A DNA stretch of 64,000 nt, taken from IMG/VR virus record IMGVR_UViG_3300050014_000823, positions 124,001-188,000 of that record; one strand, 5' to 3'. Under the pieces are notes generated by a model. The model was not told the DNA's origin. It did no database searches and was given only the letters and a program-made list of their open reading frames with translations. Shown in pieces: positions 1,090 to 41,867 of the stretch (position 1 is its first letter; each line of letters begins with the position of its first letter). The position numbers and the translations under genes are program-made.

Positions 1090-1989
1090 TTATGCGGGTG
1101 GACTACCACCATAACTTGCTTGGTCGTATGGCGTACCACGACAGAAACTTCCATTTACTGGAGTAACACTTAATATCTGAATTTCTGCAATTGAACTTCC
1201 ACCAAAGGTAGGAATACTTGATGCAAGTGTACAAACCATCCAACAAGAAGCACCATTAATACTTGTAATACACCAAGTACCGCTGCAAGTTTTAGTAAGG
1301 TTTGAAAGTGAACACACGCAATATTGAAAAGCACCATTATATACTGATACCATTGAACTTGTTGCTTTACCCACATTATTACTTAAATACCATTGTAAAC
1401 AAACATTATAACACTCACTACTGATTGGATTTCCTTGAATACAAGCAAGTGCGCAACAACCACCAACACCAGTATCACATGTATATATGTTCTGAAAACA
1501 AACTGGCTTATATGAAGGTGCTGCCGTAGTAGTTGTGGTTGCTGCTATTTGACAAAGACAAATATATTTAACATCAGCACTACAAGCATTTGGTTGTAAA
1601 CTGACATTTTCGGCTCTTGCACCACCAGTATTTGCATAAACACATATTTGTGGATTAACACCTGACGGTGACAATGTTGGAAGTGTTAAAATAGTACTCC
1701 AATATCCACCACCACTTTGATATGCATTGGCAGCTGGACCACATGCAGTAGCACATACAATTCCACCTGCAGCAGGTATGTTAACTATTGTTGTTGGTGT
1801 AACTTGAAAATTATTATATCCATACCAACAACTTGTCATATTTATTGAACCGCCTTTACCTGCGGAAGCACCTAAAGCAAGTAATGATTTAGGTCCGCTT
1901 GTATTAATACACGATGCCAAAGAAATACTACTACAGCCACCTTGCGGTGCAGATAACATTCCCATAGTACCACTACCACACATTGACAT
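1090..1989 (-). CDS. Cys-rich tail-associated protein (BACON-like middle, short Thr linker, C-terminal Cys-rich module)
   Basis: Directly follows the tail fibre gene. About 24 Cys in 299 aa by my count. CVYANTGGAR resembles BACON domains; the C-terminus resembles modules in 39015..41867. Confidence 0.5.
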   Translation of the reverse strand: MSMCGSGTMGMLSAPQGGCSSISLASCINTSGPKSLLALGASAGKGGSINMTSCWYGYNNFQVTPTTIVNIPAAGGIVCATACGPAANAYQSGGGYWSTILTLPTLSPSGVNPQICVYANTGGARAENVSLQPNACSADVKYICLCQIAATTTTTAAPSYKPVCFQNIYTCDTGVGGCCALACIQGNPISSECYNVCLQWYLSNNVGKATSSMVSVYNGAFQYCVCSLSNLTKTCSGTWCITSINGASCWMVCTLASSIPTFGGSSIAEIQILSVTPVNGSFCRGTPYDQASYGGSPPA

Positions 1990-1991
1990 AA

Positions 1992-3335
1992 TTATTCCTT
2001 ATTTTTATAACAATCTAATTCCATACAAAGGCAATTGACCTTTTTATCTAACTCTTTAATTGCTTCTATAAGTACTGCAGTTATTTTATCATAGGTTATT
2101 CCTAATCTACCATCAGTAATTCCATGTAAAATATCCTTATCGTCTGGAACACCAATTGTTACTACCTCTGGGAGTACCATCTGAGTATCTTGTGCAACCA
2201 AACCAATACGATTTGTATGTGTTTCATCGTTACATTCTTCATAGTTAACACCACGTAATTGTAATACTGTTGACAATGCATTACATATTGGCGTGATGCA
2301 TGTTTTAGTTCTACAGTCTGATGTTGCAATATAGTCAATTGCACATACACATGCTAAACCACCATCAGCAATACCATTAGACATTCTATATGATGTAATT
2401 GCACCCGAAGAACCTCTATATGCCAAATATAACACACCACCTGCAAAACCACAACCTAATGTTACTTCATTACCTGAAACTATATTTACTGCATTGGCAC
2501 AACATGCACATGTTGCATAACCTGCTGCACCTGCACTATAACCACTTAAACAACTTGCAACTGCAACACTTTGTGTACTAATATTTGCACTTGTTATAAT
2601 ATCGTAAAAAGCATTCCAAGTAGTATCAATACCTTTTCTAATTCTAAGCCAAGGTGTTCCACCGCCATTTACTGCTGTTCCACCAAAAACTAATTGATAT
2701 GAAGCATCACCAGTACTTGCAGTATTGCCATCATAAGGTGTAATTGTCATTAAACCCGCATAATTACCACCAGTTCCAACACTACCAGAACTAACGAAAT
2801 TCATGTGCATTGAACGTCCATTACTATTTGGACTATAATCGTTTGCACTTCTTGTACTATTATCGCAAATGCACATAAATTGGGTATTTGCGGCAATTGC
2901 ACTTACACCCAAGAAACAAGCAGGAGTACAGCCACAAAGGGCACTTGAATTACTTGCAGTTGCAGTTGCACCCAAGAAGCAGTTTGGTGTACAAGCACAA
3001 AGAGCCAAAGCATTACCTGCAGTTGTCGCACAAGTTGCTGTGGCTGTTGCACCTAAGAAACAAGCAGGGGTACAACCACAAAGTCCTAAAGAGTTACTTG
3101 CTGTTGCAGTTGCCCCTAAGAAACAACTTGGAACACAACCACAAAGAGCCAAAGCATTGCCAGCAGTAGTTGCACAAACAGCAGTAGCACCAGTAGCAAG
3201 ATATTTATTTGCCAAACAACTACCGTTTTCAATAACCTTTACAGATGTTAAACATGATACTCCACATACAGTAGTTCCTGAAAGTAGTGTAGCAGATACA
3301 GTATTTATTTTAATCGAACTTAAAAAATCTAACAT
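1992..3335 (-). CDS. Tail fibre/spike with C-terminal intramolecular chaperone (peptidase S74)
   Basis: TSDCRTK autocleavage-like motif, IGLVAQD..LPEVV and YDKITAVLIEAIKEL coiled coil; N-terminal GATATA repeats. Confidence 0.8.
   Translation of the reverse strand: MLDFLSSIKINTVSATLLSGTTVCGVSCLTSVKVIENGSCLANKYLATGATAVCATTAGNALALCGCVPSCFLGATATASNSLGLCGCTPACFLGATATATCATTAGNALALCACTPNCFLGATATASNSSALCGCTPACFLGVSAIAANTQFMCICDNSTRSANDYSPNSNGRSMHMNFVSSGSVGTGGNYAGLMTITPYDGNTASTGDASYQLVFGGTAVNGGGTPWLRIRKGIDTTWNAFYDIITSANISTQSVAVASCLSGYSAGAAGYATCACCANAVNIVSGNEVTLGCGFAGGVLYLAYRGSSGAITSYRMSNGIADGGLACVCAIDYIATSDCRTKTCITPICNALSTVLQLRGVNYEECNDETHTNRIGLVAQDTQMVLPEVVTIGVPDDKDILHGITDGRLGITYDKITAVLIEAIKELDKKVNCLCMELDCYKNKE
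2895..3200 (-). repeat. Two copies of a ~48-aa (144 bp) two-part Cys-containing fibre repeat
   Basis: CATTAGNALALCxCxPxCFLGATATASNSxxLCGCTPACFLG occurs twice in the translation; boundaries approximate. Confidence 0.8.
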
Positions 3336-3349
3336 AGTATTCGTTTACC

Positions 3350-3358
3350 TATAAATAC
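3350..3358 (-). promoter_or_regulatory. Putative late-promoter motif GTATTTATA
   Basis: 15 nt upstream of the tail fibre ATG (3335). Confidence 0.6.
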
Positions 3359-3360
3359 CA

Positions 3361-3395
3361 AAAAAAATAAAGTAAGTCGCTCGGACTTACTTTAT
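3361..3395 (-). terminator. Rho-independent terminator
   Basis: 12-bp stem ATAAAGTAAGTC/GACTTACTTTAT followed by a T-run on the minus strand, after the 3428 stop. Confidence 0.8.
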
Positions 3396-3427
3396 TTAAT
3401 ACAATTAAAATAAATGAAAACAAAAAA

Positions 3428-4207: not shown

Positions 4208-4235
4208 AGTTAATAATGAATTAGATATTTATATG

Positions 4236-4243
4236 CAAATATA
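4236..4243 (-). promoter_or_regulatory. Bacteroidota-type -7 promoter element TATATTTG
   Basis: Matches TAnnTTTG, with TTG about 20 nt upstream; precedes the exonuclease-like gene. Confidence 0.6.
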
Positions 4244-4245
4244 GT

Positions 4246-4254
4246 GTATTTATG
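4246..4254 (+). promoter_or_regulatory. Late-motif variant GTATTTATG
   Basis: On the + strand upstream of the + strand gene at 4273, showing the motif follows gene orientation. Confidence 0.5.
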
Positions 4255-4272
4255 TGAAAAAGCAAGGATATT

Positions 4273-5062: not shown

Positions 5063-5068
5063 AAGAAA

Positions 5069-5584: not shown

Positions 5585-5587
5585 CTG

Positions 5588-5782: not shown

Positions 5783-5785
5783 TTC

Positions 5786-6571: not shown

Positions 6572-6572
6572 A

Positions 6573-27721: not shown

Positions 27722-29701
27722 TTATTCGAAAATTGCAGAGGCACAATTCTTACATATTGTCTGATATGCTAATTCAATTTTATTCTGATGTTCTTCACTT
27801 CCCCAAAAATCCCGTAATTCCTGTGTCTTAAAACTACCAAACTTAAATTCGAACTTATAATCGTTACAACAAAGAAATGCATCGCCTGCAGCATTAATAT
27901 GTATCCAGCCAATTGGTCTTCCACCAACTTCCCGACCATTACCACAACCAATTACCTTTCTGTTTAAATCGCCCTTCATCATGTATGCCTCAATTGCCCA
28001 TTTATTTGACATGACATTATCCAATAGACCTGCTCTGTCAATTAATGAAGGTACACTGAAAATCTGTAAGCCAGGAAATAGTTGCCTTGCAAGTCTTTCT
28101 TGTGTTGCTAATTCTCCGTTTATTAGGTCTAAGTCAATATCTTGAGGAAAATCCGGACCTTTAGTTAGCCAACCACCGTCTGCAACAAACGATTGTTTAT
28201 TAACACCATTTACTTGTATTGAGAATGATTTATCCTGTACTTTTTCTGGCAACATTTCCATTGCATGCCTGATATTTGCAATAAGTTTATCGAATAATTC
28301 TATGTCGAAACCTGTTCTTTTATTCCATGTCACTGCATCGAATGCGGGAATGTTAAGACAGATACCATTTACTACATGTTTATATTTTCTTATCAAATCA
28401 ATCTTCTCAGGCGTTAATGCTACTCCATTTGACAATATCATTGAGCACATGCCATATTTATCACAGATTTCCAAGAATTCTTTATAGTGAGGATAAAGCA
28501 GAATTTCGTTATAGTGAGCACTATAAAACCCGCCAAAGTTCTTAGCTACAAGTCCATCTGGTTTATTTCTTTCGTCAACCATATTCTTAATAATCTTCTC
28601 AAGCAATTCTGGACTCATTATTTCACGTCCTTCCAAAGGATTTCCAATATATTTCACCGGACAATACCAGCACTTTGAATTACAGAAACCAAAGGGGTCT
28701 AACTGCATTTGGGTTATTTTGAATTTATCAAGTATTGTATTTTTCTTCATGGTAAAAGTATTCCCAGAAATCAGACAAGATTTTTTTGCTGTTTTACAAA
28801 CTTCTTGCCAGTAAAAATATGATGCATATTTTGGAGATACTGAAAGGTCTTTTCCATATGGATATTCGTTCATGAAATTTGACTTGAAAAACTTATCGCT
28901 TTTAGTATCATCGGTTACGCCTGCATTATGAAGTATCGTATACTTTTCAACGTCATCATAGCCGTTTGTTACCCAACCAAAGTCCATTCTCTTATCAACA
29001 AGAGTTTCATGACCAAAATACCAGCCATTCCATAAAAAACTCCACATACCTGCGGTCCATTTCTGTATGGCATAGTCATATTCGTTCTTTTTAATGTGCA
29101 GATGTTCTATACTACAAAAATATTCATATAGTTTTGCACTGTCCTTTTCAACCTTATCCCAGAACTCAAAATTTGTGCCTTTCACAATATATTGAGCACC
29201 ACCCGAATTACTGTTCATGAGTTTAGGAATCAACTTGTCGATACCAACAATTTCACACATTTTTTCATATATGTGATTTCCTTTACATTGAATATAGTCG
29301 TAGTTTATGTAGAATCTCGTATCACTAATATACCAAGTGTCATTGTTCATCATTTCTTCGAAGTTCGGCTTTTTAGTAAACACAATATCAGCATCATGCA
29401 AGAATAGTACATCACCATGAATTTCAGGATGTGCCTGCATATGTTGCTTCATCATGTTAAAATAAATTGAGGGAATATAGACTTTATTCTCTCTTGTATC
29501 GTTGTAAAAGAAAAACCTCACAGGATACGTATTGACGAGTTTTTTAAATTCTTCAGGGATTACGTCATTCTCAATTGCACAGAGAATGTCCATTTGATTA
29601 GGGTCAACGCCTTTCTCTATAAAATTGTTAATTAGTACTTCGATTTGCCAAGCATAATATTTAATGGCTGGCTGTGCACAAATATATCTTAGTTGTTTCA
29701 T
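27722..29701 (-). CDS. Fusion of a GT-A glycosyltransferase (HPAT/SERGT-like) and a radical SAM/SPASM domain (start likely MKQLR)
   Basis: N-terminal YYAWQ, HDADIVF (DxD) and LHNAG; C-terminal CNSKCWYC (CxxxCxxC) and a SPASM-like C...CCNDY...CKNC; TATCTTTG element at 29706-29713. Confidence 0.75.
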   Translation of the reverse strand: MKQLRYICAQPAIKYYAWQIEVLINNFIEKGVDPNQMDILCAIENDVIPEEFKKLVNTYPVRFFFYNDTRENKVYIPSIYFNMMKQHMQAHPEIHGDVLFLHDADIVFTKKPNFEEMMNNDTWYISDTRFYINYDYIQCKGNHIYEKMCEIVGIDKLIPKLMNSNSGGAQYIVKGTNFEFWDKVEKDSAKLYEYFCSIEHLHIKKNEYDYAIQKWTAGMWSFLWNGWYFGHETLVDKRMDFGWVTNGYDDVEKYTILHNAGVTDDTKSDKFFKSNFMNEYPYGKDLSVSPKYASYFYWQEVCKTAKKSCLISGNTFTMKKNTILDKFKITQMQLDPFGFCNSKCWYCPVKYIGNPLEGREIMSPELLEKIIKNMVDERNKPDGLVAKNFGGFYSAHYNEILLYPHYKEFLEICDKYGMCSMILSNGVALTPEKIDLIRKYKHVVNGICLNIPAFDAVTWNKRTGFDIELFDKLIANIRHAMEMLPEKVQDKSFSIQVNGVNKQSFVADGGWLTKGPDFPQDIDLDLINGELATQERLARQLFPGLQIFSVPSLIDRAGLLDNVMSNKWAIEAYMMKGDLNRKVIGCGNGREVGGRPIGWIHINAAGDAFLCCNDYKFEFKFGSFKTQELRDFWGSEEHQNKIELAYQTICKNCASAIFE

Positions 29702-29722
29702 ATTACAAAGATACAATTATTT

Positions 29723-32263
29723 TTAATATACGCAACCACATACAACAACATACGAAGAACTGCTATCATATGAAAAACATTGTGTACACCAACTGGTTCC
29801 AGTTCCACCTATATTAATATATGTATTAATACCTGTATGTCCTTGAGGACCACTTTGATACAAAAGAATGTTATCGTACTTCACATAATAACAACCTGTT
29901 GCAGGATTTACTGTGCAAGATTTTGAACTTGCAATTGGTGGAACACCTAATGTATAAACAACACTATCGTTAGAACACATTAAGCACATTGCACCACCAA
30001 CACAATAACCTAAAACATCTGTACACGTATTAATGGTCAAGGATGGTGGTAGTGTTGTAGTGGTTGTTGTCGTAGTTGTGGTAGTAGGTGGTGTTTCTGG
30101 AACACAATTAGTAACACAATCACCATAGCACTCAGTTACACCAACACTCCAACCGTCATTGGTATGTAATACGAATTCACTATATGAACCCGCATCACCA
30201 CCGACCCAGTTTGTCCAACCAATTACATCACCATGATTAACAGGCTGTAATAATCCACCCGTATGACATGTAAATTGGTCTGAACATATTGTACATATTA
30301 TGTTTGTATTACAAGTAAATTGGATACAAGAATATGCAAGTCCCGGATTTGTTGTTGATAGGTTTGCGGTGAACTGTAAGCCAAGTGAATTTCCCGGTGC
30401 TAATACTGGTGACAAGTTAATATATCCAAATTGATTGTTTGCACTACCGCCTTGACATTGAACACATAAATATGTTGGTGTTAATGGTGGTGCAGTAGTT
30501 GTACTTGTAGTTGTTGTCGTAGTAGTTGTACTTGTTGTTGTACTCGTTGTTGTACTTGTAGTGGTCGGCAACGTAGTTGTACTTGTCGTAGTTGTACTTG
30601 TCGTAGTCGGCAACGTAGTTGTACTTGTCGTAGTTGTACTTGTCGTAGTCGGTGCAGCCGGTGTAGTAATTGAGAATCTATTACTTGATGAAACAGTATC
30701 AGTACCATTCCAAGTAGCATATGCCATGTAATTATACAAAGTACTTGGGGCTAATCCATTAATTGCCGTACTGAAATGATTAACACCTGCAGGAAGTGTA
30801 GTTCCCACAACCAATTTACTCCAAACACTATCTACGGCTTTCTTATAGTACATACCGTGTTCAGTAACAAGTTCTGGTGAGGTTATTTGAGCACCACCTG
30901 TACCTGCAATACTACCTGGAAATCCTTCGATTGTCAACAATGAAAATCCTGCTTCTCCAACATAACCACCACCACCTAAAGTTGCGATGTAGTCTGGATA
31001 AGTCCAACTTCTGTTTGATTTGTATGACAAAGCAAAAAGTAATTCTTGGTCTTCGATAACAAATATTTTTAAATCGGTGAAACACTTACCAACAGGATTG
31101 CCATATGGGTCGGCTAAGACATAATATTCTAAGTTTAGAGATTTTGTCAAACCTGTTAAAAGTAATGGTGCACCAGTTGCTTTTAATTTCAATCCAAGCG
31201 TTTTTCCTGATGACTTATGCCACATAATTGTTGGAATATTCAACTCAGGAGTCTTTAAATAAAATCCTTCTCCATATACATTAGCGGGTGAAGGGTTGGT
31301 ATAGTGAATTATACCTAATTTCTTATAAAGTGGTGCTTGATTTTGTATATACGAAACAAATCCACCAAATATTTTACTGTTGTATTTTGTGAAAGTTCTA
31401 TTATTACCTGTGAGTCCTGCAATATTATCGGTAAAAACAATTGACATGTTCCAAAATGGAAAAGCTGCAGTATCACACTGACTATTTGTTAAAAATGACA
31501 ATACACTTTCCTCAACATATTGAGTAGAATATTGATTTAAGATTGTGTCTCCGGTTAAATTCAATACGTTTGCATAAATCATTGCACCTGCTAAACCAGT
31601 TGGAGTATAACCACTGAAGTTCGGTAATTCTCTGTCAACAACAACAGTTAAATTGTTATTTGCTAATGTACCTGTCTTACTTACAACTTGATACATCAAA
31701 TACGGTGTAGGTCTTGCTATATTTATTAAGTACGGTGTTGTGTCGCCATTTAAGGTCCACTTAACCAATACAAAGTCACCAATTGCTGGTTCTTGACCAC
31801 TTGCACCATAAGTCGGAGATTTGCGTAACTGCAAACTGTTTCCACCTGTAACGGTGTTCATATAAACCATTGCATCGGGTTGTTTACAGTGATTGCTGTC
31901 ATTTAAAAATGTTGTAGCACCACTATTAAAAAATCCTACGGGTTCTATTGGGTTTGTTACCAAATATGCAGAAGTTGGTACGCTTGGAATCACATTGTAC
32001 GGATTTCCACTAATATTTCTTGGAATAAATGACAATAAACTTGGGTTAGCATCTGCAGCTCTTAATATTCTGGCATAGTATGGACTTGCTGTTGGGTCAC
32101 TTGGATTATCAAGTAATACTTGACTGTTGAAAACATAATCCATTTCGCTGTCACCGATAGCAAAAGATTTAAAATTCAAATTACCCGTAGATAGTAATTC
32201 TCTACCACATGAAGTCAATTTAATGTTCAATACCACAGGGTCTTTTTTCTCAATGAATGCCAT
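29723..32263 (-). CDS. Tail/baseplate structural protein with FN3-like domain, Thr stalks and Cys-rich modules
   Basis: N-terminal FAIGDSEMDY; GLAPSTLYNYMAYA FN3-like segment; long Thr tract; late motif at 32280-32288. Confidence 0.65.
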   Translation of the reverse strand: MAFIEKKDPVVLNIKLTSCGRELLSTGNLNFKSFAIGDSEMDYVFNSQVLLDNPSDPTASPYYARILRAADANPSLLSFIPRNISGNPYNVIPSVPTSAYLVTNPIEPVGFFNSGATTFLNDSNHCKQPDAMVYMNTVTGGNSLQLRKSPTYGASGQEPAIGDFVLVKWTLNGDTTPYLINIARPTPYLMYQVVSKTGTLANNNLTVVVDRELPNFSGYTPTGLAGAMIYANVLNLTGDTILNQYSTQYVEESVLSFLTNSQCDTAAFPFWNMSIVFTDNIAGLTGNNRTFTKYNSKIFGGFVSYIQNQAPLYKKLGIIHYTNPSPANVYGEGFYLKTPELNIPTIMWHKSSGKTLGLKLKATGAPLLLTGLTKSLNLEYYVLADPYGNPVGKCFTDLKIFVIEDQELLFALSYKSNRSWTYPDYIATLGGGGYVGEAGFSLLTIEGFPGSIAGTGGAQITSPELVTEHGMYYKKAVDSVWSKLVVGTTLPAGVNHFSTAINGLAPSTLYNYMAYATWNGTDTVSSSNRFSITTPAAPTTTSTTTTSTTTLPTTTSTTTTSTTTLPTTTSTTTSTTTSTTTTTTTTSTTTAPPLTPTYLCVQCQGGSANNQFGYINLSPVLAPGNSLGLQFTANLSTTNPGLAYSCIQFTCNTNIICTICSDQFTCHTGGLLQPVNHGDVIGWTNWVGGDAGSYSEFVLHTNDGWSVGVTECYGDCVTNCVPETPPTTTTTTTTTTTLPPSLTINTCTDVLGYCVGGAMCLMCSNDSVVYTLGVPPIASSKSCTVNPATGCYYVKYDNILLYQSGPQGHTGINTYINIGGTGTSWCTQCFSYDSSSSYVVVCGCVY
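30564..30652 (-). repeat. Perfect 42-bp tandem duplication inside the Thr stalk
   Basis: gtcggcaacgtagttgtacttgtcgtagttgtacttgtcgta at 30564-30605 and 30606-30647. Confidence 0.9.
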
Positions 32264-32296: not shown

Positions 32297-35200
32297 TTAA
32301 ATACTACAATCTAAAGTTGGCGTAAAATCTGTACCACTACCTTGAAGTCTATTATTGCACTTAATTGTTACTCCACCAATGTTTGCGACTACTGAAATTA
32401 TTTCTACCCAGAATCCACCATCAGACGAATCACTGAAACCAGTGCTCCAAGACCAATTTCCTCTAAATCTAATCTTAGCAATATCTGTTGCAGCTACTGT
32501 TACTGTTGTTGTTCCCGTTGCTTCTGCATAGCCTCCACTCTGTGGTGGATTTACATCACATGATACAGCATCTATCATACCAAAATTAACACCATCTGTA
32601 CTCATTTCGAATTGTGCTTGTGATTGATTATAACCACCAGAATATTCGTTACCACAAGTAGCAGAAACAAAATATTTAAATGTTATTGTAAATGTTTGAG
32701 TAGTTGCATTATCGGCAGCCATTATACCTGACTGTTGTATGTTATTAACTGAACCAAAATAAACTTGTGGTGTTGCAGGTGTAATAAATGACACTTCATT
32801 ACCATAAGAAGTTCCAACGGCACTTGTCGCATATGCTCTAACATAGTATGTTGTATTTGGTGCTAAACCAGTCATACTACTAACAAATGCACCTGTTCCA
32901 CTACCATCTACAGTATGTGAACCAGCAATTGTCGGACCACTTGATACACCCCAAGCAATACCACGTGCAGTCACAGGTTGAGTACCTGCATCAGTGACAT
33001 TACCACCGCCAGTTGCTGTTGTTTGTGCGATTGATGTTATTGTATTCGTTGTAACGGTTGGTGCTACTGGTGTTATCTGTGCTGTCGCTAATGTCAGAAC
33101 ATTTCCATAGTATTCAACACCACCAATAACCATATATGAACGATATTCATATGTTGTATTGGCAACTAAACCATTAATAATATAACTATAAGTACTGCCA
33201 ATTATTGGACCTGCAACTAATGGTGTGGTTGACCATGCGCCAGATATTCTGAATTGCATACCATACCAATTGGCTGAATTACCACCAATTACATTAATAC
33301 CACCTGTTGAAATTGTTGTTTGTGTTGAAGTACCTGCAAGTGTTTCAAGACTTGGAACAATCGGAACTGCAAGTGTTGTTGCTTGCAATGTTGCACCCGA
33401 TGCCGAATATATTCCAGATTGTATATATGCAAAATAATAATATAATGTATTTGGAGTTAATGGCGATGGCGATGCCGACATAGTATAACTATTCGTAATA
33501 GGTGCACCCAATTCAAATACTTTTTGCCAAGGACCTGTTGGTGATGTACTGTATTTCACGCCATATTCGGTAATCGTATTAAGACCAGTACTTATACTGA
33601 TATTATTACCACCAAAATTATTAATGCTTCCGATTCCCGGACTACCTGCTGTTGTTTCAACAAATAGTGTTGGGTCAACTGGTGGCGGTGGAGCATTGAT
33701 TTCTTGATTTATTAAGAATGTACTGCCATCATCACCCAAATAATGTACCATTGGCATACCTCTCATGTCCATAGTCGTTGAATTACCCGAATATAAATTT
33801 ACACCCCTTCTGTACATGAATTTTTGCTTGGTGAAGACCGTATTTCTTACAAGTAATCCACCCTGTTTCAATATTATTGTTGCTGATAGTAATTCGTCAA
33901 CAAATCTCTGAAAAAACGCATTATATTTACTTAAGAACGGATAAAGATTTTCAAAAGTATAACCATTAGAATGTAACGGGTCGTTATAAGGCAACTGACC
34001 TCTGATAAGATACTGAATATAAACATTTAAAAGTGTTGGATACCAACCACCTTTGAAGTCCGAAATAGTCTTACGAGTTTTTGCGTTTATAAGTCTTCTC
34101 TGAATTAATTCAATAAATTCCAAGAAAGAAAGTTTACTTATGTCGCCAACACCAAAACTATCGTGAACAATTGGCGTGAAATATGCACTGCCACCAACAA
34201 GATAATATACGCTAATAACCGAACCATAGTTGATACCTCTTGGTAAAAAGATTTCAAATAGATTCATAGGATTAATGTCATAGTCCATTCCTGGCTCTAA
34301 AGCGATACCATCGACAAGTACTTTAACATCTGAGGCACTATTTGCCTTGTAGTTCATTTTATAAACATACTTGTTAGCTGAAACGTTGAAATATATTTTA
34401 CTTGTGTTAAAACTATCAACCCTCTGTACTTCACTACGTGCATTAATGTCGTTACTACCACTAACTTCCAAATATGCAACAACAACACTTTGGTTTTGTA
34501 TTGATGCAAGATATGCAATTACTTCGGGGTTCTGAATAATAATATTATTTAGACCACCAACAGAATTAGCGGGGTCAACAATATAATCGGCAACAAATTG
34601 TGGTGTACCCTTTGTCATTGCAATACCATTCATCGTCACCTGTACATCACCACGTGGATAACCCGGTAATGGAATATATGTGCCAAGTTGTGTCAATGTT
34701 GGTTTAATTCTCGCAACAATATATTGAACGGTAATACCTGTAACTGGGTGTGTGCCACCAGAATAAACAAACGTTGCTTGTATTACGTCTCTTTGATTTC
34801 CTTGATTTATTGCACTTCCTCTAACTAAATAAATTTTATTAGTAATCTTACTATATGTATAATCATATGCGGGTACAGGCACATCAAATGGCGGTGTTGG
34901 TGCGTCATGTATTCCAGTCTCATCGTAATATTTATTTGGTGTTAATAAAATACCGTTATAACGAACCTCTAAATATCCCCCAACCTTATTTGCATTAAAC
35001 GGTAAAGTAAATTCGGTTTGTCCGCTTAATGCTGTTCCAGTTACTGGTAACGATATGTTCACGTAAGAGAATGGCAATGTATATCCACTTGAATTGGCTG
35101 CAAAGTCTTTCTCAATGTAAGTATAAACATCATATTCAATACCACGTGCAGTATCAAGTGCAACGTCAACTTCTTTGGTATTTAAAACTAATTTGCTGTC

Positions 35201-36907
35201 GGCTTGATTGTATTGTGGTGTACTATAATGAATTCTTGTTGTTGCACCTGTTTGTATCCATGACTTTTTATTGTCAACGGTTCGCATAAGATTAAATCCG
35301 GCTTGACGAAAATTATCCATGTATGCTTGACCACTATCAGTATCACCGCTAATCTGAAAATAAAATGCAGGTGATTCTAATGGTGCTACAGGATATCCAC
35401 TATTGTCATATGGTAGAGAATTATTCGGAAAATCTGCCTGTGTTAGTGGTACTGTATTCGGATTAATCTTACCTTGTACAGTATAAACGTATTCAGTTAT
35501 ATTAATAAAGGGTTCTGGAATACCAATAAGTAAGAATATTGATTTAATTGCTTGTCTTGTACCTTTAGACTTCCAAAGATAATTGGTGTTTATTAGAATC
35601 CTTCTCCAAAGTTCTATGTTTACTTCGGCAGGCATTAAGTCTGTGCCTAAAACTCTTTCGGTGCTGTCAATGCTTAAAAAATTATCAACAAGTTCGCCTT
35701 CGTTGACCAACGTGAAATAATCCCAACCAAATGTTCTTGCTAAGTTGCTCACTAATTGGTCGGGTATATTATTTAATTTATCGTATGTGACTGTGTTTAT
35801 ATTAACCAAAGAGTCAATAAATTTTCTTAATTGGTCAAATTCCCAACCATAAACTCTCAAAAGTTTAGTCATCTTACCGTCTTCAGTAAGGTCATAAGTC
35901 TTAATTGAGGCGGGTGTTAAGAATCTTGCAATTAAGTCGGTCTTAACTGCATCGTACTTAGCACCAATTGCCAACATAGATGTTAAAAACTTCTGATATG
36001 GAGTAGTACTAATATCTATATTATATCCGTCTGTTGTGGTCCACAACATTGAAGTTGTACTATATACAACACTACCGTCATCAAGTAGTGATGGTTCATT
36101 TATTGTAAACTGAAAACCGCTTGTAAATTGTCTTTGTGAAACAATATATTGCTCATAACTTGTCAGTAATGCTCTGAATTCCTCAAAAACAAAATTATTT
36201 GGCTTGATATGAAAGTCAAGTTTATTGGTCATACCAGTATTGAACAGGAATGGGTTGCCTTGAGTTTTCACCCAAACATATGGTATGCCCGATGTATCGC
36301 CAGTAAAACCAATTAGTGGATATGCATTATTCGGGTCATATTTTGACCAAATTACATATTTCTCATAAGATAAGTTTAAGTTTCTGATTACCATGTCATT
36401 TGGTTGACTTAAATTACCCATATTAAAGACTAATCCGAATGTATTTGCAATACATGCTGAAGGAATCTGGATTAATGACTCGTCAGTAATAACATTGTAG
36501 TTAAAATTAAGAATAGTTGGATTACCACCAAGAATTATATTTGAATTACAATAAAGACTTCCCGGATATTTTAAAATAATTTCCTGTATTGTAACTCTGA
36601 AGAATTCATATGTGCTACCAAATCTAACAAACGTATTAAGGTTGGATTTATCAAGATTTAGCACTGCGTTTACTTGATATTGATGCAATACTGCAGATTG
36701 TACGTCAGTAACACCAAGAGTTTCCAGTGTAACAGGACGCACAAAAGAATCTAAGGTGTTTGTGTAGTCAATTGGTATTCTACCACTAAAGTTAGAGGTA
36801 ACAGAAAACGTACCAAACTGGAAAATGGTTTCTGATGCCGTGTTATTAAAATTTGTACCGTTTAAATTTTGGTCAAGACCTGTACCTACTACTTTTACTT
36901 TTGCCAC
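32297..36907 (-). CDS. Large baseplate/tail protein with C-terminal FN3-like repeats
   Basis: LWKSKGTRQAI (baseplate wedge-like), three FN3-like units (TxYYVRAYA..VGTSYG); GTG start; late motif at 36924-36932. Confidence 0.65.
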   Translation of the reverse strand: MAKVKVVGTGLDQNLNGTNFNNTASETIFQFGTFSVTSNFSGRIPIDYTNTLDSFVRPVTLETLGVTDVQSAVLHQYQVNAVLNLDKSNLNTFVRFGSTYEFFRVTIQEIILKYPGSLYCNSNIILGGNPTILNFNYNVITDESLIQIPSACIANTFGLVFNMGNLSQPNDMVIRNLNLSYEKYVIWSKYDPNNAYPLIGFTGDTSGIPYVWVKTQGNPFLFNTGMTNKLDFHIKPNNFVFEEFRALLTSYEQYIVSQRQFTSGFQFTINEPSLLDDGSVVYSTTSMLWTTTDGYNIDISTTPYQKFLTSMLAIGAKYDAVKTDLIARFLTPASIKTYDLTEDGKMTKLLRVYGWEFDQLRKFIDSLVNINTVTYDKLNNIPDQLVSNLARTFGWDYFTLVNEGELVDNFLSIDSTERVLGTDLMPAEVNIELWRRILINTNYLWKSKGTRQAIKSIFLLIGIPEPFINITEYVYTVQGKINPNTVPLTQADFPNNSLPYDNSGYPVAPLESPAFYFQISGDTDSGQAYMDNFRQAGFNLMRTVDNKKSWIQTGATTRIHYSTPQYNQADSKLVLNTKEVDVALDTARGIEYDVYTYIEKDFAANSSGYTLPFSYVNISLPVTGTALSGQTEFTLPFNANKVGGYLEVRYNGILLTPNKYYDETGIHDAPTPPFDVPVPAYDYTYSKITNKIYLVRGSAINQGNQRDVIQATFVYSGGTHPVTGITVQYIVARIKPTLTQLGTYIPLPGYPRGDVQVTMNGIAMTKGTPQFVADYIVDPANSVGGLNNIIIQNPEVIAYLASIQNQSVVVAYLEVSGSNDINARSEVQRVDSFNTSKIYFNVSANKYVYKMNYKANSASDVKVLVDGIALEPGMDYDINPMNLFEIFLPRGINYGSVISVYYLVGGSAYFTPIVHDSFGVGDISKLSFLEFIELIQRRLINAKTRKTISDFKGGWYPTLLNVYIQYLIRGQLPYNDPLHSNGYTFENLYPFLSKYNAFFQRFVDELLSATIILKQGGLLVRNTVFTKQKFMYRRGVNLYSGNSTTMDMRGMPMVHYLGDDGSTFLINQEINAPPPPVDPTLFVETTAGSPGIGSINNFGGNNISISTGLNTITEYGVKYSTSPTGPWQKVFELGAPITNSYTMSASPSPLTPNTLYYYFAYIQSGIYSASGATLQATTLAVPIVPSLETLAGTSTQTTISTGGINVIGGNSANWYGMQFRISGAWSTTPLVAGPIIGSTYSYIINGLVANTTYEYRSYMVIGGVEYYGNVLTLATAQITPVAPTVTTNTITSIAQTTATGGGNVTDAGTQPVTARGIAWGVSSGPTIAGSHTVDGSGTGAFVSSMTGLAPNTTYYVRAYATSAVGTSYGNEVSFITPATPQVYFGSVNNIQQSGIMAADNATTQTFTITFKYFVSATCGNEYSGGYNQSQAQFEMSTDGVNFGMIDAVSCDVNPPQSGGYAEATGTTTVTVAATDIAKIRFRGNWSWSTGFSDSSDGGFWVEIISVVANIGGVTIKCNNRLQGSGTDFTPTLDCSI

Positions 36908-36938: not shown

Positions 36939-36971
36939 AAAAAAAATCCCAATTGTTTACATCGGGATTTT
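36939..36971 (-). terminator. Rho-independent terminator
   Basis: Stem AAAATCCC/GGGATTTT with a T-run. Confidence 0.65.
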
Positions 36972-36997
36972 CTCGTTAATTTCTGTTGTTTGTACTA

Positions 36998-37897: not shown

Positions 37898-37898
37898 C

Positions 37899-38555
37899 TT
37901 AAACTTTTATTAATTCTTCTTTACTTATCGAACATTTTGTTCTCTTAACAACATTATCTCTCCAAGGTATAAATACAAGATTATTTAAACTTGCAATTAT
38001 TTCTGGTTTAATGTCATTTTTAAATCCCTCAAAAATTGAATATTTATGGTCCAAACAATATGCACCGTCAATTCCAGAAACACCCCTTTTCTCATAATTT
38101 TCCAATAAACTAATTGGTTGTTTATTGGTTAATTTAACAACCAATAATCTATATTTTTTATATTCGGGTAAGTTTTTTAAATATGTGTTATATTCAATAC
38201 CTGTGCGTTTAACTAAACCTACAGAAACTCCTTCACTAACAGTTCTCCTATAATTAACGGTAGTTAAATATTTATCTAAATATGAAGCATTTATATTCAA
38301 CACTTTACTGATTTCCTTAGCACTTTTATATTCAAACAAATATAATTTACGTATTTCATCCCTTTGTTTTTCGCTTAATATAATTTTAATACCATTACTT
38401 TTCCCTTTTCTTAATACATGTTCTCTTTTTAAAATCCTGTTTATCGGAGTGAGACTTGTGTTAAGTAGTTCTCCAATTTTTTTCGTACTTAATCCATCAA
38501 TCAAATAATAATTTTTGATTTTATTAACTTCAATATCAGAAAATTCTATCCTCAT
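37899..38555 (-). CDS. HNH-like free-standing endonuclease with N-terminal HTH repeats
   Basis: LDHKYSI...NNL.FIPW.DN..K (HNH-like); two HTH-like segments; inserted between tail genes. Confidence 0.65.
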   Translation of the reverse strand: MRIEFSDIEVNKIKNYYLIDGLSTKKIGELLNTSLTPINRILKREHVLRKGKSNGIKIILSEKQRDEIRKLYLFEYKSAKEISKVLNINASYLDKYLTTVNYRRTVSEGVSVGLVKRTGIEYNTYLKNLPEYKKYRLLVVKLTNKQPISLLENYEKRGVSGIDGAYCLDHKYSIFEGFKNDIKPEIIASLNNLVFIPWRDNVVKRTKCSISKEELIKV

Positions 38556-38995
38556 GTGTTATTAACTATATTAAAGAAATTACCGCCAGCATATGTCGTC
38601 AAATCAACCAAACTTTGAATATATTCAAGTCTGTAGTTTTGGTCAAAAGCCGACAATTCTTGTCTTACTATAAATACATCATCATAAATTTTTGGGTTAC
38701 TGATAATGTTTTCTTTATTCGGGTCTTTATAAATCGGTGCAGTAATGAAGTCTGGACTGCTATATCCTTGTCCAATAAAGCTAAACGTAGTCCCACTTGT
38801 TTCACCTGTGAGAATGTCTGTATATTTTATGCCACCAAGATAATACACTACTTTTGAACCTGCTGTTGAGACAAAATAATCTACACCATCAAATGTCGGA
38901 CTACCGTTACCAACATATTGCAATAGAAAATTACTTGTGATTGTATATTTTCGCAATTCTGTTAATCGACTACTTGATGAACCTGTTACTACCAT
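38552..38995 (-). CDS. Probable structural protein
   Basis: Late motif at 39007-39015; tail-cluster context. Confidence 0.55.
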   Translation of the reverse strand: MVVTGSSSSRLTELRKYTITSNFLLQYVGNGSPTFDGVDYFVSTAGSKVVYYLGGIKYTDILTGETSGTTFSFIGQGYSSPDFITAPIYKDPNKENIISNPKIYDDVFIVRQELSAFDQNYRLEYIQSLVDLTTYAGGNFFNIVNNT

Positions 38996-39014
38996 TTTAA
39001 TTTTATTATAAATA

Positions 39015-41867
39015 CTATACTGGTGCTATATCACCTGCATATACATCATTAGGACTACCTATGACATAATTACCAACAATATTTGACACACCCACCAAGT
39101 ATGCATCGGCAGATGCTGCAGACTCTGGACAAATACTTGCAGCTCGTGTTGTAAGATATAAATTATCTCCTGCATTAACTATAAACGGACCCCAAATTCC
39201 ACCAATATATCCACTGAAACTACTTGCAATACTACAGCTACATTTGGTTACACCATTACATACGATACAAACACCTGCAGTGCCTTTAAACGCATTTTTA
39301 CCAAGACTATATGCAACACATAAATTAAATGAATCTCCTGCACACATAGATGGACACAATTGACCCTCACACGTAGAATTAAATATATCCAAATATATCT
39401 GACAAACATATGATGCAGTGGTTGTGGTTGTTGTAGTAGTTGGCAACGTAGTTGTCGTTGTAGTTGTTGTCGTAGGTGGAGGACCGCCTGCATAGCTACA
39501 GCAACAATATGGATTACATCTTGCAAAATTGCCAGAAATTGGTGTAACACCAATACATACTGCTGACATACTACCACCATGACAAGAAATATTTCCCACT
39601 TCAGTATAATTAAACATACGAACATCGTCACCAGGAAGAACTTGGAATGAAATTGAAGGCATTAAACAAACCTGTGCTTCGGTTATGCAACAACATAGCA
39701 TTGGATTACCATTACACATTACACAGAAACGTGAGAACGAACCCGGTGCTTGGTCATAATTAACACATAAATCACCAGTTATGCATGCACAATAACATTC
39801 ACCTGCGCTCATTGGATATGATGAAGCCAAGCAAAAATCTCTTGCACTATAAATACCACCATCATTGCCTGGAGCAACATATGTCATACATAAATCAATA
39901 TATTTTACCGCAGGTGGTGGAAGTGTTGTGGTAGTCGTGGTAGTTGTTGTTGTTGTGGTTGTCGTAGGTGGAGTTCCCCCTGCATAACTACAGCAACAAT
40001 AAGGCGTTCCTAATTGATAATTGCCAACAATCGGAGCAACTGAACGAATACATATGCCTGACATTGTACCACCCGGACATGTAATGTTTGCTACTTCCGT
40101 ATAATTACACATGTACACCGTATCACCTTGATGAACAATAATTGTGGTACTTGGTATAGCACAAACTTCTGTTTGGTCTATGCAACAAGTTAAACAACAT
40201 GACCCATTATGACCTATACCCGCACGTGAGTATGAACCCGGTGCTTGGTTATAATTAACACATAAATCAGCCATTAAACAAACAGAATAACTATCGCCCG
40301 GAGCCATTGGACTCGATGTTGCTAAACAAAATTCTCTTGTACTATAAACACTACCGTCATTACCGGGAGCAGCATATGTTTGAAATAAAGTAACATAATT
40401 CGGTGGTGGTGCAGTAGTCGTTGTGGTAGTTGTTGTCGTTGTAGTAGTCGTTGTAGTACTTGTTGTGGTTGTCGCCTCTGTTGTAAACACCGATTGACCA
40501 TCATATGCAGTTCCTGCATTATTGGTTGCATATACACCTACATAATAGGTTGTAGCTGGAATTAAACCAGTCATTAAACTTGCAAAGCCGACACCAACAG
40601 TATTATTGCCATCAGTTGTTTTAAAATTCGCAGTTGTTGGGTTTGGACTTGTACTCCAAACAATACCACTTACAGTTATTGGTGCGCCACCGTCACTAAG
40701 TATGACTCCACCGCCTTGTGCTGTTGTTTGAGTTACACTACCTGCGCCACCAGTTGCTACTGTTGGTAAATCTGCTGCTGTTTTGAACAATACTTCATTA
40801 CCATAAGCGATACCCACAGCATTAATTGCATATGCTCGTACATAATATGAAGTAATCTTAGTCAATCCTGTGATTGAAGACGTAAATGTTCCAATACCTG
40901 TTCCATCGACAACAACATTGTCCAGAATTGTCGGAGTACTACTTGTGCTCCAAACTATTCCTTTCTCAGTTACAGGATTACCACCTTCTGAAGTCACATT
41001 ACCACCACCTGTTGCAGTTGTTTGTGCAATTGCAGTAATACTGCTTGTGGTTACAGTTGCAAGTCCCCAAGTACTGAATGACAATTCACTACCGTACATA
41101 ATATCTGTATTATTAACTGCATATGCTCGAACAAAATATGTTGTTGATGTAGTTAAACCCGTCAAATAACTATTAAAATTACCAATTCCAAACCCATTCG
41201 TTGTTGTATTGCCTGCAATGGTAGGTCCAGAGAATAATCCCCAAGCAACACCACGTCTGATTATCGGACTACCGCCATCAGCAGTTATTTCACCACCAGT
41301 GGTTGCACCACTTGACGTAATATTTGTTATTGGTTTTGTAGAAATTGTAGAAATTGCTAATGTCGTGAAATTTACTTCCTCACCATAAACAAGTCCAGCA
41401 CTATTAATAGCATATGCACGTGCATAATATGTAGTAAGATTTGTTAAACCGCTTATTGGCACTGTAAAAGTACCTAATCCACCTGCAACAATTATTTTTG
41501 TACTTGCTGTTGTCGGATTTGGACTTGTACTATATACAAGACCTCTTTGTGTAACAGCATGTCCACCGTCTGCAAGAACCGCACCACCGCCAATTGCAGA
41601 GTTTTTAGTAATTGTTGAAAATGTGTTTGTTGATACTGTTAAAGTAGTTAAAGGCGGTGCTATATAAGCACTAAAGAAACCAATATCTTCGGCATCCTGT
41701 GTCAAACTAAATTTGACATAGTATGTTTTGCTCAAATCGGGAACAAGCGTCATTGTGGTTGCCGTACAGCCAGTAATGAGAATACCCGTTTCCGGGTCTC
41801 TGTACGAACACGGAGCAGTTGTTCCGGTTGTCATTATCCGATATATTGTTTTCTTTATGAGTTCCAT
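39015..41867 (-). CDS. Tail-associated adhesin-like protein: four FN3-like repeats, then three Thr-stalk plus Cys-rich modules
   Basis: Repeats of TxYYxRAYA.N..G..YG.E..F.T; TTTT tracts; duplicated APGNDG...NYTEV...PYCCCSYAGG modules. Confidence 0.7.
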   Translation of the reverse strand: MELIKKTIYRIMTTGTTAPCSYRDPETGILITGCTATTMTLVPDLSKTYYVKFSLTQDAEDIGFFSAYIAPPLTTLTVSTNTFSTITKNSAIGGGAVLADGGHAVTQRGLVYSTSPNPTTASTKIIVAGGLGTFTVPISGLTNLTTYYARAYAINSAGLVYGEEVNFTTLAISTISTKPITNITSSGATTGGEITADGGSPIIRRGVAWGLFSGPTIAGNTTTNGFGIGNFNSYLTGLTTSTTYFVRAYAVNNTDIMYGSELSFSTWGLATVTTSSITAIAQTTATGGGNVTSEGGNPVTEKGIVWSTSSTPTILDNVVVDGTGIGTFTSSITGLTKITSYYVRAYAINAVGIAYGNEVLFKTAADLPTVATGGAGSVTQTTAQGGGVILSDGGAPITVSGIVWSTSPNPTTANFKTTDGNNTVGVGFASLMTGLIPATTYYVGVYATNNAGTAYDGQSVFTTEATTTTSTTTTTTTTTTTTTTTAPPPNYVTLFQTYAAPGNDGSVYSTREFCLATSSPMAPGDSYSVCLMADLCVNYNQAPGSYSRAGIGHNGSCCLTCCIDQTEVCAIPSTTIIVHQGDTVYMCNYTEVANITCPGGTMSGICIRSVAPIVGNYQLGTPYCCCSYAGGTPPTTTTTTTTTTTTTTLPPPAVKYIDLCMTYVAPGNDGGIYSARDFCLASSYPMSAGECYCACITGDLCVNYDQAPGSFSRFCVMCNGNPMLCCCITEAQVCLMPSISFQVLPGDDVRMFNYTEVGNISCHGGSMSAVCIGVTPISGNFARCNPYCCCSYAGGPPPTTTTTTTTTLPTTTTTTTTASYVCQIYLDIFNSTCEGQLCPSMCAGDSFNLCVAYSLGKNAFKGTAGVCIVCNGVTKCSCSIASSFSGYIGGIWGPFIVNAGDNLYLTTRAASICPESAASADAYLVGVSNIVGNYVIGSPNDVYAGDIAPV

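What the first reader, a model, noticed from the sequence alone, without database searches (positions are those of the whole stretch)
1090..41867. A mobile Thr-stalk plus Cys-rich module family grafted onto several structural proteins
SEEN: mucin-like TTTT(S)TTT tracts each followed by a ~110-140 aa Cys-rich domain. There are three in 39015..41867, two in 29723..32263 and one in 1090..1989. Several share the ending xSVxPxxGxY/FxxGxPxxxxxY/AGGxPP (e.g. LSVTPVNGSFCRGTPY..SYGGSPP versus RSVAPIVGNYQLGTPYCCCSYAGGTPP). The stalks show recent slippage (42-bp duplication). INFERENCE: interchangeable adhesin or decoration domains on extensible stalks, spread by recombination in the Thr codon tracts. 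The architecture resembles eukaryotic surface glycoproteins.
Basis: partly seen in the sequence, partly recalled or inferred. Interest (0 to 1): 0.62.

Follow-up and report, generated by a model that had tools for sequence, protein, structure and literature searches.

The report
Shuffled Cys-rich tail modules on Thr stalks
A 299-kb peat phage hangs a previously unnamed family of cysteine-rich beta-sandwich domains on its baseplate and tail-fibre proteins, often on poly-threonine linkers, and related phages carry the same domains on different proteins, so they look like swappable host-binding tips.

Summary
Three ORFs on the minus strand (39015-41867, 29723-32263, 1090-1989) carry Thr tracts followed by Cys-rich modules. 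The 42-bp repeat is real: 2.6 copies, 95% matches.

The window lies in a 299-kb tailed jumbo phage from peat. A profile built only from foreign proteins recognises five of the six modules as one family (famA). The first module of 29723-32263 matches weakly and in part. The last module of that ORF belongs to a second family. A third module type ends the neighbouring 1536-aa protein. A fourth carrier lies outside the window.

FamA has about 65 relatives among 1.84 billion representative proteins. It has no Pfam model, no PHROG match of note and no PDB sequence match. It folds confidently (pLDDT 95) as a beta sandwich. Its nearest fold matches, all weak, are lectin/CBM domains and the receptor-binding end of lambda-type gpJ.

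Interchangeability is shown. FamA sits behind at least five N-terminal anchors. Orthologues of the conserved 29723-32263 core have variable C-termini. The closest relative (70% core identity) carries the same three module types on different proteins.

Three points are not shown: recombination inside the Thr codons, glycosylation, and adhesion itself. Cysteine positions are poorly conserved, which remains unexplained.

The parts
41652..41867 (-). P0001 N-terminal anchor (type D, residues 1-72)
   Evidence: 60% identical to residues 1-101 of the 287-aa gene that follows the gp6-like gene in relative L011. The same anchor heads family members P0181 and P0184.
40473..41651 (-). P0001 spacer of four FN3-like repeats (residues 73-465)
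   Evidence: Weak Pfam fn3 and NAR2 matches. The same repeat type in P0002 folds as FN3 with Z 10.9.
40413..40472 (-). P0001 Thr stalk 1 (20 residues)
   Evidence: Translation. 30-bp repeat of 2 copies, 90% matches.
39966..40412 (-). Module M1, family A (149 aa, 14 Cys)
   Evidence: Foreign-only profile E 8e-36. 57% identical to M2.
39924..39965 (-). P0001 Thr stalk 2 (14 residues)
39474..39923 (-). Module M2, family A (150 aa, 18 Cys)
   Evidence: E 5.5e-38. AlphaFold2 model with pLDDT 95.2 and pTM 0.88, all beta.
39417..39473 (-). P0001 Thr stalk 3 (T9-LP-T8)
39018..39416 (-). Module M3, family A (133 aa, 10 Cys)
   Evidence: E 5.6e-18.
38552..38995 (-). 147-aa ORF: the C-terminal domain of the ancestral anchor-D gene, now a separate ORF
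   Evidence: 75% identical to residues 141-287 of the L011 287-aa gene. Has its own ATG 19 nt after the P0001 stop, in another frame.
41867..43714 (-). gp6-like baseplate wedge gene directly upstream of P0001
   Evidence: phrog_219, E 1.5e-21. Weak Pfam Gp6-like_1st match. The order gp25 then gp6-like is kept in L011, L015 and L016.
30974..32263 (-). P0002 conserved core (residues 1-430), fold unknown
   Evidence: More than 400 orthologues at 50-70% identity. AF2 model poor, pLDDT 62. No PDB sequence match.
30659..30952 (-). P0002 FN3 domain (residues 438-535)
   Evidence: VIA-align Z 10.9, rmsd 2.7, 100 aligned to Ihog FN3.
30494..30658 (-). P0002 long T/S stalk (55 residues) holding the 42-bp tandem repeat at 30544-30652
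   Evidence: TRF: period 42, 2.6 copies, 95% matches. Logan contigs of two peat runs break inside it.
30086..30493 (-). Module M4, divergent family A (136 aa, 10 Cys)
   Evidence: Partial match, E 4.7e-6, profile positions 13-98 of 141. 35% identical to the C-terminal module of orthologue P0034 (E 1e-10) and linked to family member P0168.
30053..30085 (-). P0002 Thr stalk 2 (11 residues)
29726..30052 (-). Module M5, second family (famB; 109 aa, 10 Cys)
   Evidence: No family-A match. 35% identical over its full length, E 4e-14, to the C-terminus of a separate 289-aa gene in relative L011.
32300..32776 (-). Third module type (ModC) at the C-terminus of the 1536-aa protein 32297-36907
   Evidence: Homologous to the first post-stalk module of P0004 (E 1e-12) and to P0123 residues 838-987 (E 2e-15).
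1810..1989 (-). P0003 N-terminal anchor (type A, residues 1-60)
   Evidence: Same motif (...SL..L...AG......M..FYGY) as in about 30 foreign proteins of about 195 aa from this family.
1516..1545 (-). P0003 short linker AATTTTTAAP
1093..1515 (-). Module M6, family A (141 aa)
   Evidence: E 4.8e-16.
1992..3335 (-). Tail-fibre gene directly upstream of P0003 (447 aa, 7.4% Cys, C-terminal Peptidase_S74 chaperone)
   Evidence: PHROG tail-fibre families down to E 3.7e-22. Pfam Peptidase_S74, E 6e-8. The same order (S74 fibre, then module protein) occurs in L008 and at genome 203733-205733 / 203002-203733.
27722..29716 (-). Gene directly downstream of P0002: a conserved ~320-aa domain fused to a radical SAM/SPASM domain. 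A neighbour, not shown to belong to the module system.
   Evidence: Pfam Radical_SAM E 4e-11 and SPASM E 2e-7. The N-domain scores 0.97 in Atlas features against clusters of which 10% carry HPAT. The two domains are separate, neighbouring genes in L011, L017 and L018.

Best explanation
The modules are distal, exchangeable binding heads of the phage's tail apparatus. Family A is a ~140-aa Cys-rich beta sandwich. An N-terminal anchor fixes it to the virion. The anchor may be a baseplate-wedge-associated segment encoded after gp6, a conserved ~420-aa core, the ~1500-aa neighbour, or a short peptide encoded next to a tail-fibre gene. A spacer of FN3 repeats and/or a flexible poly-Thr stalk holds the module away from the anchor.

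The phage displays several heads of three families in series and in parallel. Related phages re-sort them among carriers by illegitimate or short-homology recombination at domain borders, which changes what the virion sticks to.

Shown: the anatomy, the homology, the fold class, the position in tail gene clusters, and the re-sorting between relatives. Inferred: binding, the ligand, virion location, extension of the stalk, and the recombination mechanism.
For: - Family membership with a foreign-only profile. The whole library of 1.84 billion representatives holds 67 hits at E up to 1e-3, almost all ending a protein.
- Confident all-beta model of M2.
- Fold leads to binding domains: Fbs1/Fbs2 sugar-binding domains (Z 7.6 and 7.3), phage A8 gpJ central-fibre C-terminus (Z 6.7, 120 aligned), CBM16/51/61 (Z about 6). 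Atlas clusters of gpJ C-terminal receptor-binding domains reach TM 0.60-0.62 with 124-125 aligned.
- Tail context: gp6-like gene upstream of P0001, and an S74 tail fibre upstream of P0003, of the fourth carrier and of foreign P0134.
- At least five anchor types.
- Variable orthologue architectures.
- Permuted modules between the window and L011.
- P0001 arose by placing a spacer-plus-module array into the gene after gp6, which split that gene.
Against: - No structural match reaches Z 8 or a Foldseek TM of 0.5 against PDB, so the fold says only 'generic sandwich'.
- There is no experimental or expression evidence: no RNA run holds the stretch.
- Cysteine positions are poorly conserved, which is odd for an extracellular binding domain and is not explained by this model.
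- The fold of the P0002 core, and so its place in the virion, is unknown.
- Stalk DNA shows no excess identity between genes after allowing for 21 comparisons.
Confidence: 0.6

Rival explanations
1. The modules are adherence decorations rather than receptor-specific heads. They would be weak, multivalent binders of environmental or capsular polymers (peat polysaccharides, host slime). They would keep the particle near hosts, as the Ig-like Hoc domains of T4 are proposed to do on mucus, without deciding host range.
For: Tandem arrays of up to three heads on flexible stalks and FN3 spacers. Fold leads to CBM and lectin domains. Peat habitat. The array in P0001 is an add-on to a gene that relatives have without it.
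Against: Several carriers are encoded directly after tail-fibre genes, the usual place of specific adhesins. No ligand is known either way.
Confidence: 0.2
2. The modules are structural cross-linkers or stabilisers. Their many thiols would form variable disulfide, metal or thioether bridges that harden the fibres in acidic peat. On this view binding is not their job.
For: 8-23 Cys per module against 1.58% in the proteome. The tail fibres of the same phage are also Cys-rich at 4.8-7.4%. Some Cys columns co-occur. A radical SAM/SPASM gene sits next to P0002.
Against: A purely structural element would not be expected to be re-sorted among carriers or to be absent from most orthologues. The co-occurrence is confounded by relatedness. 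The radical SAM gene is widely conserved and often far from module genes.
Confidence: 0.12
3. It is a compositional artefact: low-complexity Thr runs and Cys-rich tails that are not real domains, or not real genes.
For: None beyond the low complexity of the stalks.
Against: Significant homologues in many independent metagenomes. A confident fold. Identical sequence in a second IMG/VR contig and in two peat runs.
Confidence: 0.01

Closest known systems
C-terminal receptor-binding domain of lambda-type central tail fibre gpJ (Pfam PF12421 Ig_GpJ_C; PDB 9wca chain J)
   Same: A C-terminal, distal beta sandwich of similar size on a tail protein. Fold similarity is TM 0.60-0.62 to Atlas clusters and Z 6.7 to 9wca_J.
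   Different: No sequence match to PF12421. Family A is Cys-rich, occurs in tandem, and sits on many carriers rather than one. The fold scores are in the range of generic sandwiches.
Carbohydrate-binding modules joined by Pro/Thr-rich linkers in bacterial glycoside hydrolases; Fbs1/Fbs2 sugar-binding domains
   Same: A small beta-sandwich module set off by a Thr/Pro linker, with the module bracketed by PP motifs (T(n)-L/A-P-P ... G-G-x-P-P-T(n)). Fold leads at Z 5.7-7.6.
   Different: No catalytic partner. The setting is a phage tail. No sequence relation to any Pfam CBM. Sugar binding is untested. That such linkers are O-glycosylated in cellulases is stated from general knowledge, not tested here.
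T-even gp38-type adhesins and other small proteins encoded after the distal tail-fibre gene
   Same: P0003, the fourth carrier and P0134 are small proteins encoded directly after (P0134: one ORF after) a tail-fibre gene. Each has a short conserved N-terminal segment and a variable C-terminal head.
   Different: No PHROG or Pfam match to gp38 families. The fibre here ends in a Peptidase_S74 chaperone, unlike T4 gp37. Docking on the fibre is not shown.
Ig-like/FN3 decoration domains of tailed phages (for example T4 Hoc) and shuffling of receptor-binding domains between phage tail genes
   Same: Accessory beta-sandwich domains are added to structural proteins and exchanged between phages. FN3 spacers are present.
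   Different: The head domain is a new Cys-rich family. The spacers include poly-Thr stalks of 11-55 residues, which I know of in few phage proteins (own knowledge). One literature search of three of four terms found nothing comparable.

Membership tests
Family A module (defined here by alignment A3) | Significant match to a profile built only from foreign members | tested here: met
   M1 8e-36, M2 5.5e-38, M3 5.6e-18, M6 4.8e-16, fourth carrier 2.1e-9. M4 only partial at 4.7e-6. M5 no match.
Family A module (defined here by alignment A3) | Motifs G-D/E-C-Y..C, C-N-G, F.V..GD and the C-terminal I..V-T/S-x-I/V-x-G-S/N-F/Y..G-T/S | tested here: met
   Seen in the alignments for M1, M2, M3, M6 and the fourth carrier.
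gpJ C-terminal receptor-binding domain (PF12421) | Sequence match to the Pfam model | tested here: not met
   No Pfam match in the module regions at E up to 0.1.
gpJ C-terminal receptor-binding domain (PF12421) | Same fold | tested here: inconclusive
   TM 0.60-0.62 over 124-125 residues. Z 6.7, rmsd 3.8, 120 aligned to 9wca_J. Both are within the range of chance sandwich matches.
Carbohydrate-binding module / lectin sandwich | Fold match clearly above background and conserved sugar-binding residues | tested here: inconclusive
   Best Z 7.6 (Fbs1), and none reaches 8. Foldseek TM is under 0.5. Binding residues were not examined.
Disulfide-scaffold domain (fixed Cys framework) | Conserved cysteine positions | tested here: not met
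   No invariant Cys column in 58 sequences. Five columns exceed 65% Cys and 22 columns have 25% or more.
Mucin-like / PT-linker O-glycosylated stalk | Long Thr/Ser/Pro tract between folded domains | tested here: met
   Tracts of 11-55 residues between FN3 and modules or between modules.
Mucin-like / PT-linker O-glycosylated stalk | O-glycans on the tract | not testable with these tools
   Only leads. An HPAT-like feature match for the neighbouring gene's N-domain has no Pfam or PDB support. Glycosyltransferase genes lie nearby at 47397-48812 and in relatives.
gp38-type tail-fibre tip adhesin | Gene directly after the distal tail-fibre gene | tested here: met
   P0003 follows 1992-3335. The fourth carrier follows genome 203733-205733. 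P0134 follows an S74 fibre plus one ORF.
gp38-type tail-fibre tip adhesin | Sequence relation to gp38 families | tested here: not met
   No PHROG or Pfam match for P0003 or P0134.
FN3 domain | FN3 fold of the spacer before the stalk | tested here: met
   P0002 residues 438-540: Z 10.9, with 155 chains at Z 8 or more, all FN3.

The most novel reading that the evidence does not exclude
The stalk-and-module arrays are substrates of a phage-encoded maturation system. Here the gene directly downstream of P0002 fuses a glycosyltransferase-like domain (HPAT-like lead) to a radical SAM/SPASM domain. In relatives these are neighbouring genes, once with a 2OG-Fe(II) oxygenase between them. Such a system could glycosylate the Thr/Pro stalks, cross-link the cysteines (thioether-type bridges), or both. 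The result would be a post-translationally hardened, mucin-like tail appendage, something not described for phages.
Probability: 0.12. Interest if true: 0.8.

Novelty: new variant of a known kind. Interest (0 to 1): 0.5.

Why it matters
Host recognition is the least predictable part of uncultured jumbo phages. This work defines a domain family with no model in Pfam and no annotated PHROG. It marks the exchangeable distal ends of tail proteins in a widespread group of 300-370-kb phages from peat and sediment. It also gives a worked example of three module types permuted among neighbouring structural genes in two phages whose cores are 70% identical.

The family profile can flag candidate receptor-binding ends in metagenomic phage genomes. 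Two further questions are now testable: why the heads are so Cys-rich without a fixed Cys pattern, and whether a fused glycosyltransferase-like/radical SAM gene nearby matures the virion.

Tried and rejected
- Pfam and PHROGs on the three proteins gave only weak fn3 matches and no annotated function for the modules: two PHROGs of unknown function, and one weak 'major tail protein' match over the FN3 region of P0002.
- A blastn search of the phage collection found only a short match in the HNH gene region to huge-phage records.
- The window has no tRNA genes.
- The search for related loci in viral contigs found only a near-identical 107-kb contig with no stalk-length differences.
- A profile of the four core modules alone did not find M4 or M5.
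- PDB sequence searches with the P0002 core, its profile, the family-A profile and the neighbour's N-domain profile gave nothing usable.
- The AF2 model of the P0002 core was poor (pLDDT 62), and only its FN3 part matched anything. The Atlas search on the core gave only 'hypothetical viral'.
- Foldseek against PDB and BFVD gave no match with TM of 0.5 or more.
- The test for stalk-to-stalk recombination was negative: longest shared DNA words match the synonymous null in 18 of 21 pairs, and the remaining three (P 0.02-0.05) do not survive correction.
- Reads. Only Logan contigs were available. They break in the 42-bp repeat, so copy-number polymorphism could not be read. A low-depth joint between the two P0002 stalks has a short side and many mismatches and was dismissed.
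- Complex prediction of the fibre tip (three copies) with the P0003 N-domain returned 'no answer'. It is not used as evidence either way.
- Cys co-occurrence: two column pairs pass Bonferroni correction but are confounded by relatedness.
- The idea that the radical SAM gene is an accessory tied to module carriers was weakened. Both of its domains have hundreds to thousands of homologues at 60-84% identity, often elsewhere in the genome.
- No 2OG-Fe(II) oxygenase was found in this genome.
- Three literature searches found nothing on this architecture.
- No alternative genetic code was needed or used.
Full report
**Setting**

The window is bases 124001-188000 of a 299,144-bp IMG/VR virus record, 91% complete by CheckV. 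It has 35% G+C and nearly all genes are on the minus strand.

PHROG and Pfam matches mark it as a tailed jumbo phage. They include:
- a gp6-like baseplate wedge gene (41867-43714);
- a tail fibre with a Peptidase_S74 C-terminal chaperone (1992-3335);
- SbcCD-like nucleases, a primase and HNH endonucleases.

Two peat metagenome runs hold the stretch almost completely. Others from peat and freshwater sediment hold small shares. No RNA run holds it.

**Observation**

Domain borders were checked against the DNA.

- P0001 (39015-41867, 950 aa) has a 72-aa N-terminal segment and four FN3-like repeats. Three units of Thr stalk plus module follow: stalks of 20, 14 and 19 residues, and modules M1, M2 and M3.
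- P0002 (29723-32263, 846 aa) has a ~430-aa core and one FN3 domain (Z 10.9). Then come a 55-residue T/S stalk, M4, an 11-residue stalk and M5.
- P0003 (1090-1989, 299 aa) has a 60-aa N-terminal segment, an 88-aa middle part, the short linker AATTTTTAAP and M6.

A fourth carrier lies outside the window at genome 203002-203733. It has 243 aa, two long stalks and one module.

The 42-bp tandem repeat is at 30544-30652, with 2.6 copies and 95% matches.

The modules have 8-12% Cys against 1.58% for the proteome. All Thr tracts of 10 or more residues in the genome lie in module carriers.

**Are the modules one family?**

Within the genome, M1 and M2 are 57% identical. M3 and M6 are detectably related, and M4 and M5 are not.

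A profile of five modules was run against 1.84 billion representative proteins. It found 67 proteins at E up to 1e-3, two of them from this genome.

I aligned 58 modules (A3) and then rebuilt the profile from the 53 foreign ones only. Against all ORFs of the genome it scored:
- M1 8e-36
- M2 5.5e-38
- M3 5.6e-18
- M6 4.8e-16
- fourth carrier 2.1e-9
- M4 4.7e-6, over profile positions 13-98 only
- M5 no match

M4 is also 35% identical to the C-terminal module of orthologue P0034 and is linked to family member P0168. I count it as a divergent member.

M5 belongs to a second family. It is 35% identical over its full length (E 4e-14) to the C-terminus of a separate 289-aa gene in the closest relative.

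A third type, ModC, ends the 1536-aa protein 32297-36907. It recurs in P0004 and P0123.

**Fold**

With A3 as input, M2 folds with pLDDT 95.2 and pTM 0.88 as a ten-strand all-beta domain. No PDB or BFVD entry matches well by Foldseek; TM stays under 0.5.

The exhaustive aligner gives these best matches:
- Z 7.6 and 7.3 to the sugar-binding domains of Fbs1 and Fbs2;
- Z 6.7 to the C-terminal part of the central tail fibre gpJ of phage A8;
- Z about 6 to several CBMs.

The Atlas shape search gives TM 0.64 to a viral SprB-repeat protein cluster. It gives TM 0.60-0.62 to clusters annotated as gpJ C-terminal receptor-binding domains.

These are leads to binding domains, not proof. The tool itself warns that Z under 8 is common for unrelated sandwiches. 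Pfam, PHROGs and PDB sequence profiles give no annotated function for the modules.

**Cysteines**

Family-A modules hold 8-23 Cys, 15.6 on average. Nearly all are on predicted strands, often as CxCxC or CCC. Yet no column is invariant and only five exceed 65% Cys. Cys alternates with S, T, A, Y and N.

The tail fibres of this phage are Cys-rich too, at 4.8-7.4%. A fixed disulfide scaffold does not fit, and this feature remains unexplained.

**Carriers and exchange**

The foreign members show at least five N-terminal anchor types:
- Type A: about 55 aa ending in ...M-x-E-F-Y-G-Y, as in P0003. It heads some 30 proteins of about 195 aa.
- Type B: ending in ...L-L-N-F-R-N-Y, as in the fourth carrier. 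It matches phrog_21885.
- Type C: a short Gly-rich peptide followed by a Thr stalk.
- Type D: as in P0001.
- FN3-led proteins.

Only about 9 of 65 foreign members have Thr stalks.

Type A and B proteins sit after tail-fibre genes. P0003 follows 1992-3335. The fourth carrier follows an S74 fibre at genome 203733-205733. Foreign P0134 follows an S74 fibre plus one small ORF.

The P0002 core has more than 400 orthologues at 50-70% identity. They range from 472 to 1134 aa, and everything after residue ~420 varies. Some have a short Cys-rich tail, some FN3 arrays. Some have Thr, TTAAP or TST stalks of up to 81 residues. Family-A modules occur in about a dozen, along with other domains.

The closest orthologue, P0004, is 70% identical through the FN3 domain. 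It loses all similarity exactly where the stalk starts. Its locus L011 holds the same three module types on different carriers.

| Phage | Gene order and modules |
|---|---|
| Window | [1536 aa ... FN3-FN3-ModC] [core-FN3-stalk-famA-stalk-famB] |
| L011 | [1461 aa ... famA] [289 aa: T10-FN3-FN3-famB] [core-FN3-stalk-ModC-stalk-famA] |

This comparison rests.

P0001 is itself a product of such an event. In relatives the gene after gp6-like is 215-287 aa, made of anchor D plus a conserved C-domain. Here anchor D is followed by the FN3-stalk-module array and a stop. The C-domain (75% identical) is a separate 147-aa ORF starting 19 nt later, in another frame.

**Mechanism of exchange**

The stalks use mixed Thr codons. 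The longest words shared between stalks are 10-19 nt. That is no more than synonymous resampling gives in 18 of 21 pairs. Three pairs reach P 0.02-0.05, which does not survive correction for 21 tests.

So there is no sign of recent stalk-to-stalk homologous exchange in this genome. Most family members move without stalks. One breakpoint (P0002/P0004) does coincide with a stalk start.

Slippage within a stalk is real (the 42-bp repeat). Assemblies break there, so population variation could not be read.

Two HNH endonuclease genes (43714-44406 and 37899-38555) flank P0001 and are absent at those places in L011. They may promote local exchange, but that is inference.

**Neighbouring enzyme**

Directly downstream of P0002 lies a 664-aa gene with two parts. 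The first is a very conserved ~320-aa domain with more than 3000 homologues. Its Atlas features score 0.97 against clusters in which 10% of members carry the HPAT glycosyltransferase family. It has no Pfam or PDB support.

The second part is a radical SAM domain (CX3CX2C) plus a SPASM domain. It is the only radical SAM gene in the genome.

The two domains are separate genes in relatives:
- adjacent in L018;
- near each other in L011;
- in L017, with a 2OG-Fe(II) oxygenase between them.

Both are widely conserved and not always near module genes. I therefore report a link to the stalks or cysteines only as the novel reading, at low probability.

**Verdict**

The modules are real and homologous, though they form three families rather than one, and they are exchanged among tail-associated carriers.

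A role as distal binding heads is the best-supported function (confidence 0.6), but it rests on fold leads and gene position. Glycosylation, stalk-mediated recombination and the role of the cysteines are open.

This is a new variant of a known kind: modular, shuffled phage tail-tip domains. The new elements are an unnamed Cys-rich domain family and unusual poly-Thr linkers.

No alternative code was used.

Noticed in passing
window 27722-29716 (-): A 664-aa fusion of a highly conserved ~320-aa domain (HPAT-like glycosyltransferase lead, H-D-x-D motif) with a radical SAM/SPASM domain. The two parts are separate neighbouring genes in related phages, once with a 2OG-Fe(II) oxygenase between them. 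It is the only radical SAM gene in this genome.
   Followed up: partly
window 38552-38995 (-) and 39015-41867 (-): The gene that follows gp6-like in relatives (215-287 aa) is split here. Its N-terminal part heads P0001, and its C-terminal domain is a separate 147-aa ORF 19 nt downstream in another frame. In L016 the same gene is split differently (107 aa, an inserted 154-aa ORF, then 197 aa).
   Followed up: yes
window 37899-38555 (-) and 43714-44406 (-): Two HNH/homing-endonuclease-like genes flank the gp6-like/P0001 region. They are absent at the corresponding places in relative L011, so they may be mobile insertions.
   Followed up: partly
window 1992-3335 (-); 2906-3177: The tail-fibre gene has 7.4% Cys and a 144-bp tandem repeat (1.9 copies, 81% matches). 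The repeat encodes repeated ...GNALALCGC.P.CFLGATATA... units ahead of a Peptidase_S74 chaperone domain.
   Followed up: no
window 51962-60028 (-): A 2688-aa ORF with PHROG matches to tRNA nucleotidyltransferase (residues 1753-1966), RNA ligase (2172-2262) and an acetyltransferase-like stretch. This is an unusually large multidomain RNA-repair-like protein.
   Followed up: no
window 20428-21720 (+): One of the few plus-strand genes: a transposase (phrog_506, E 3e-114) inside the replication/repair gene block.
   Followed up: no
L011 9092-9961: The 289-aa gene of the closest relative begins M-P-A-P-T10, a Thr stalk at the very N-terminus. It starts 28 nt after the stop of the 1461-aa gene, which itself ends in a family-A module. 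This looks like a former stalk junction that has become a gene border.
   Followed up: partly
window 47397-48812 (-); L014 1528-2983; L018 13239-16036: Glycosyltransferase genes recur near the baseplate and fibre clusters of this phage group: a PHROG glycosyltransferase here, two GT2 genes in L014, and two GT7-plus-Laminin_G genes in L018.
   Followed up: no
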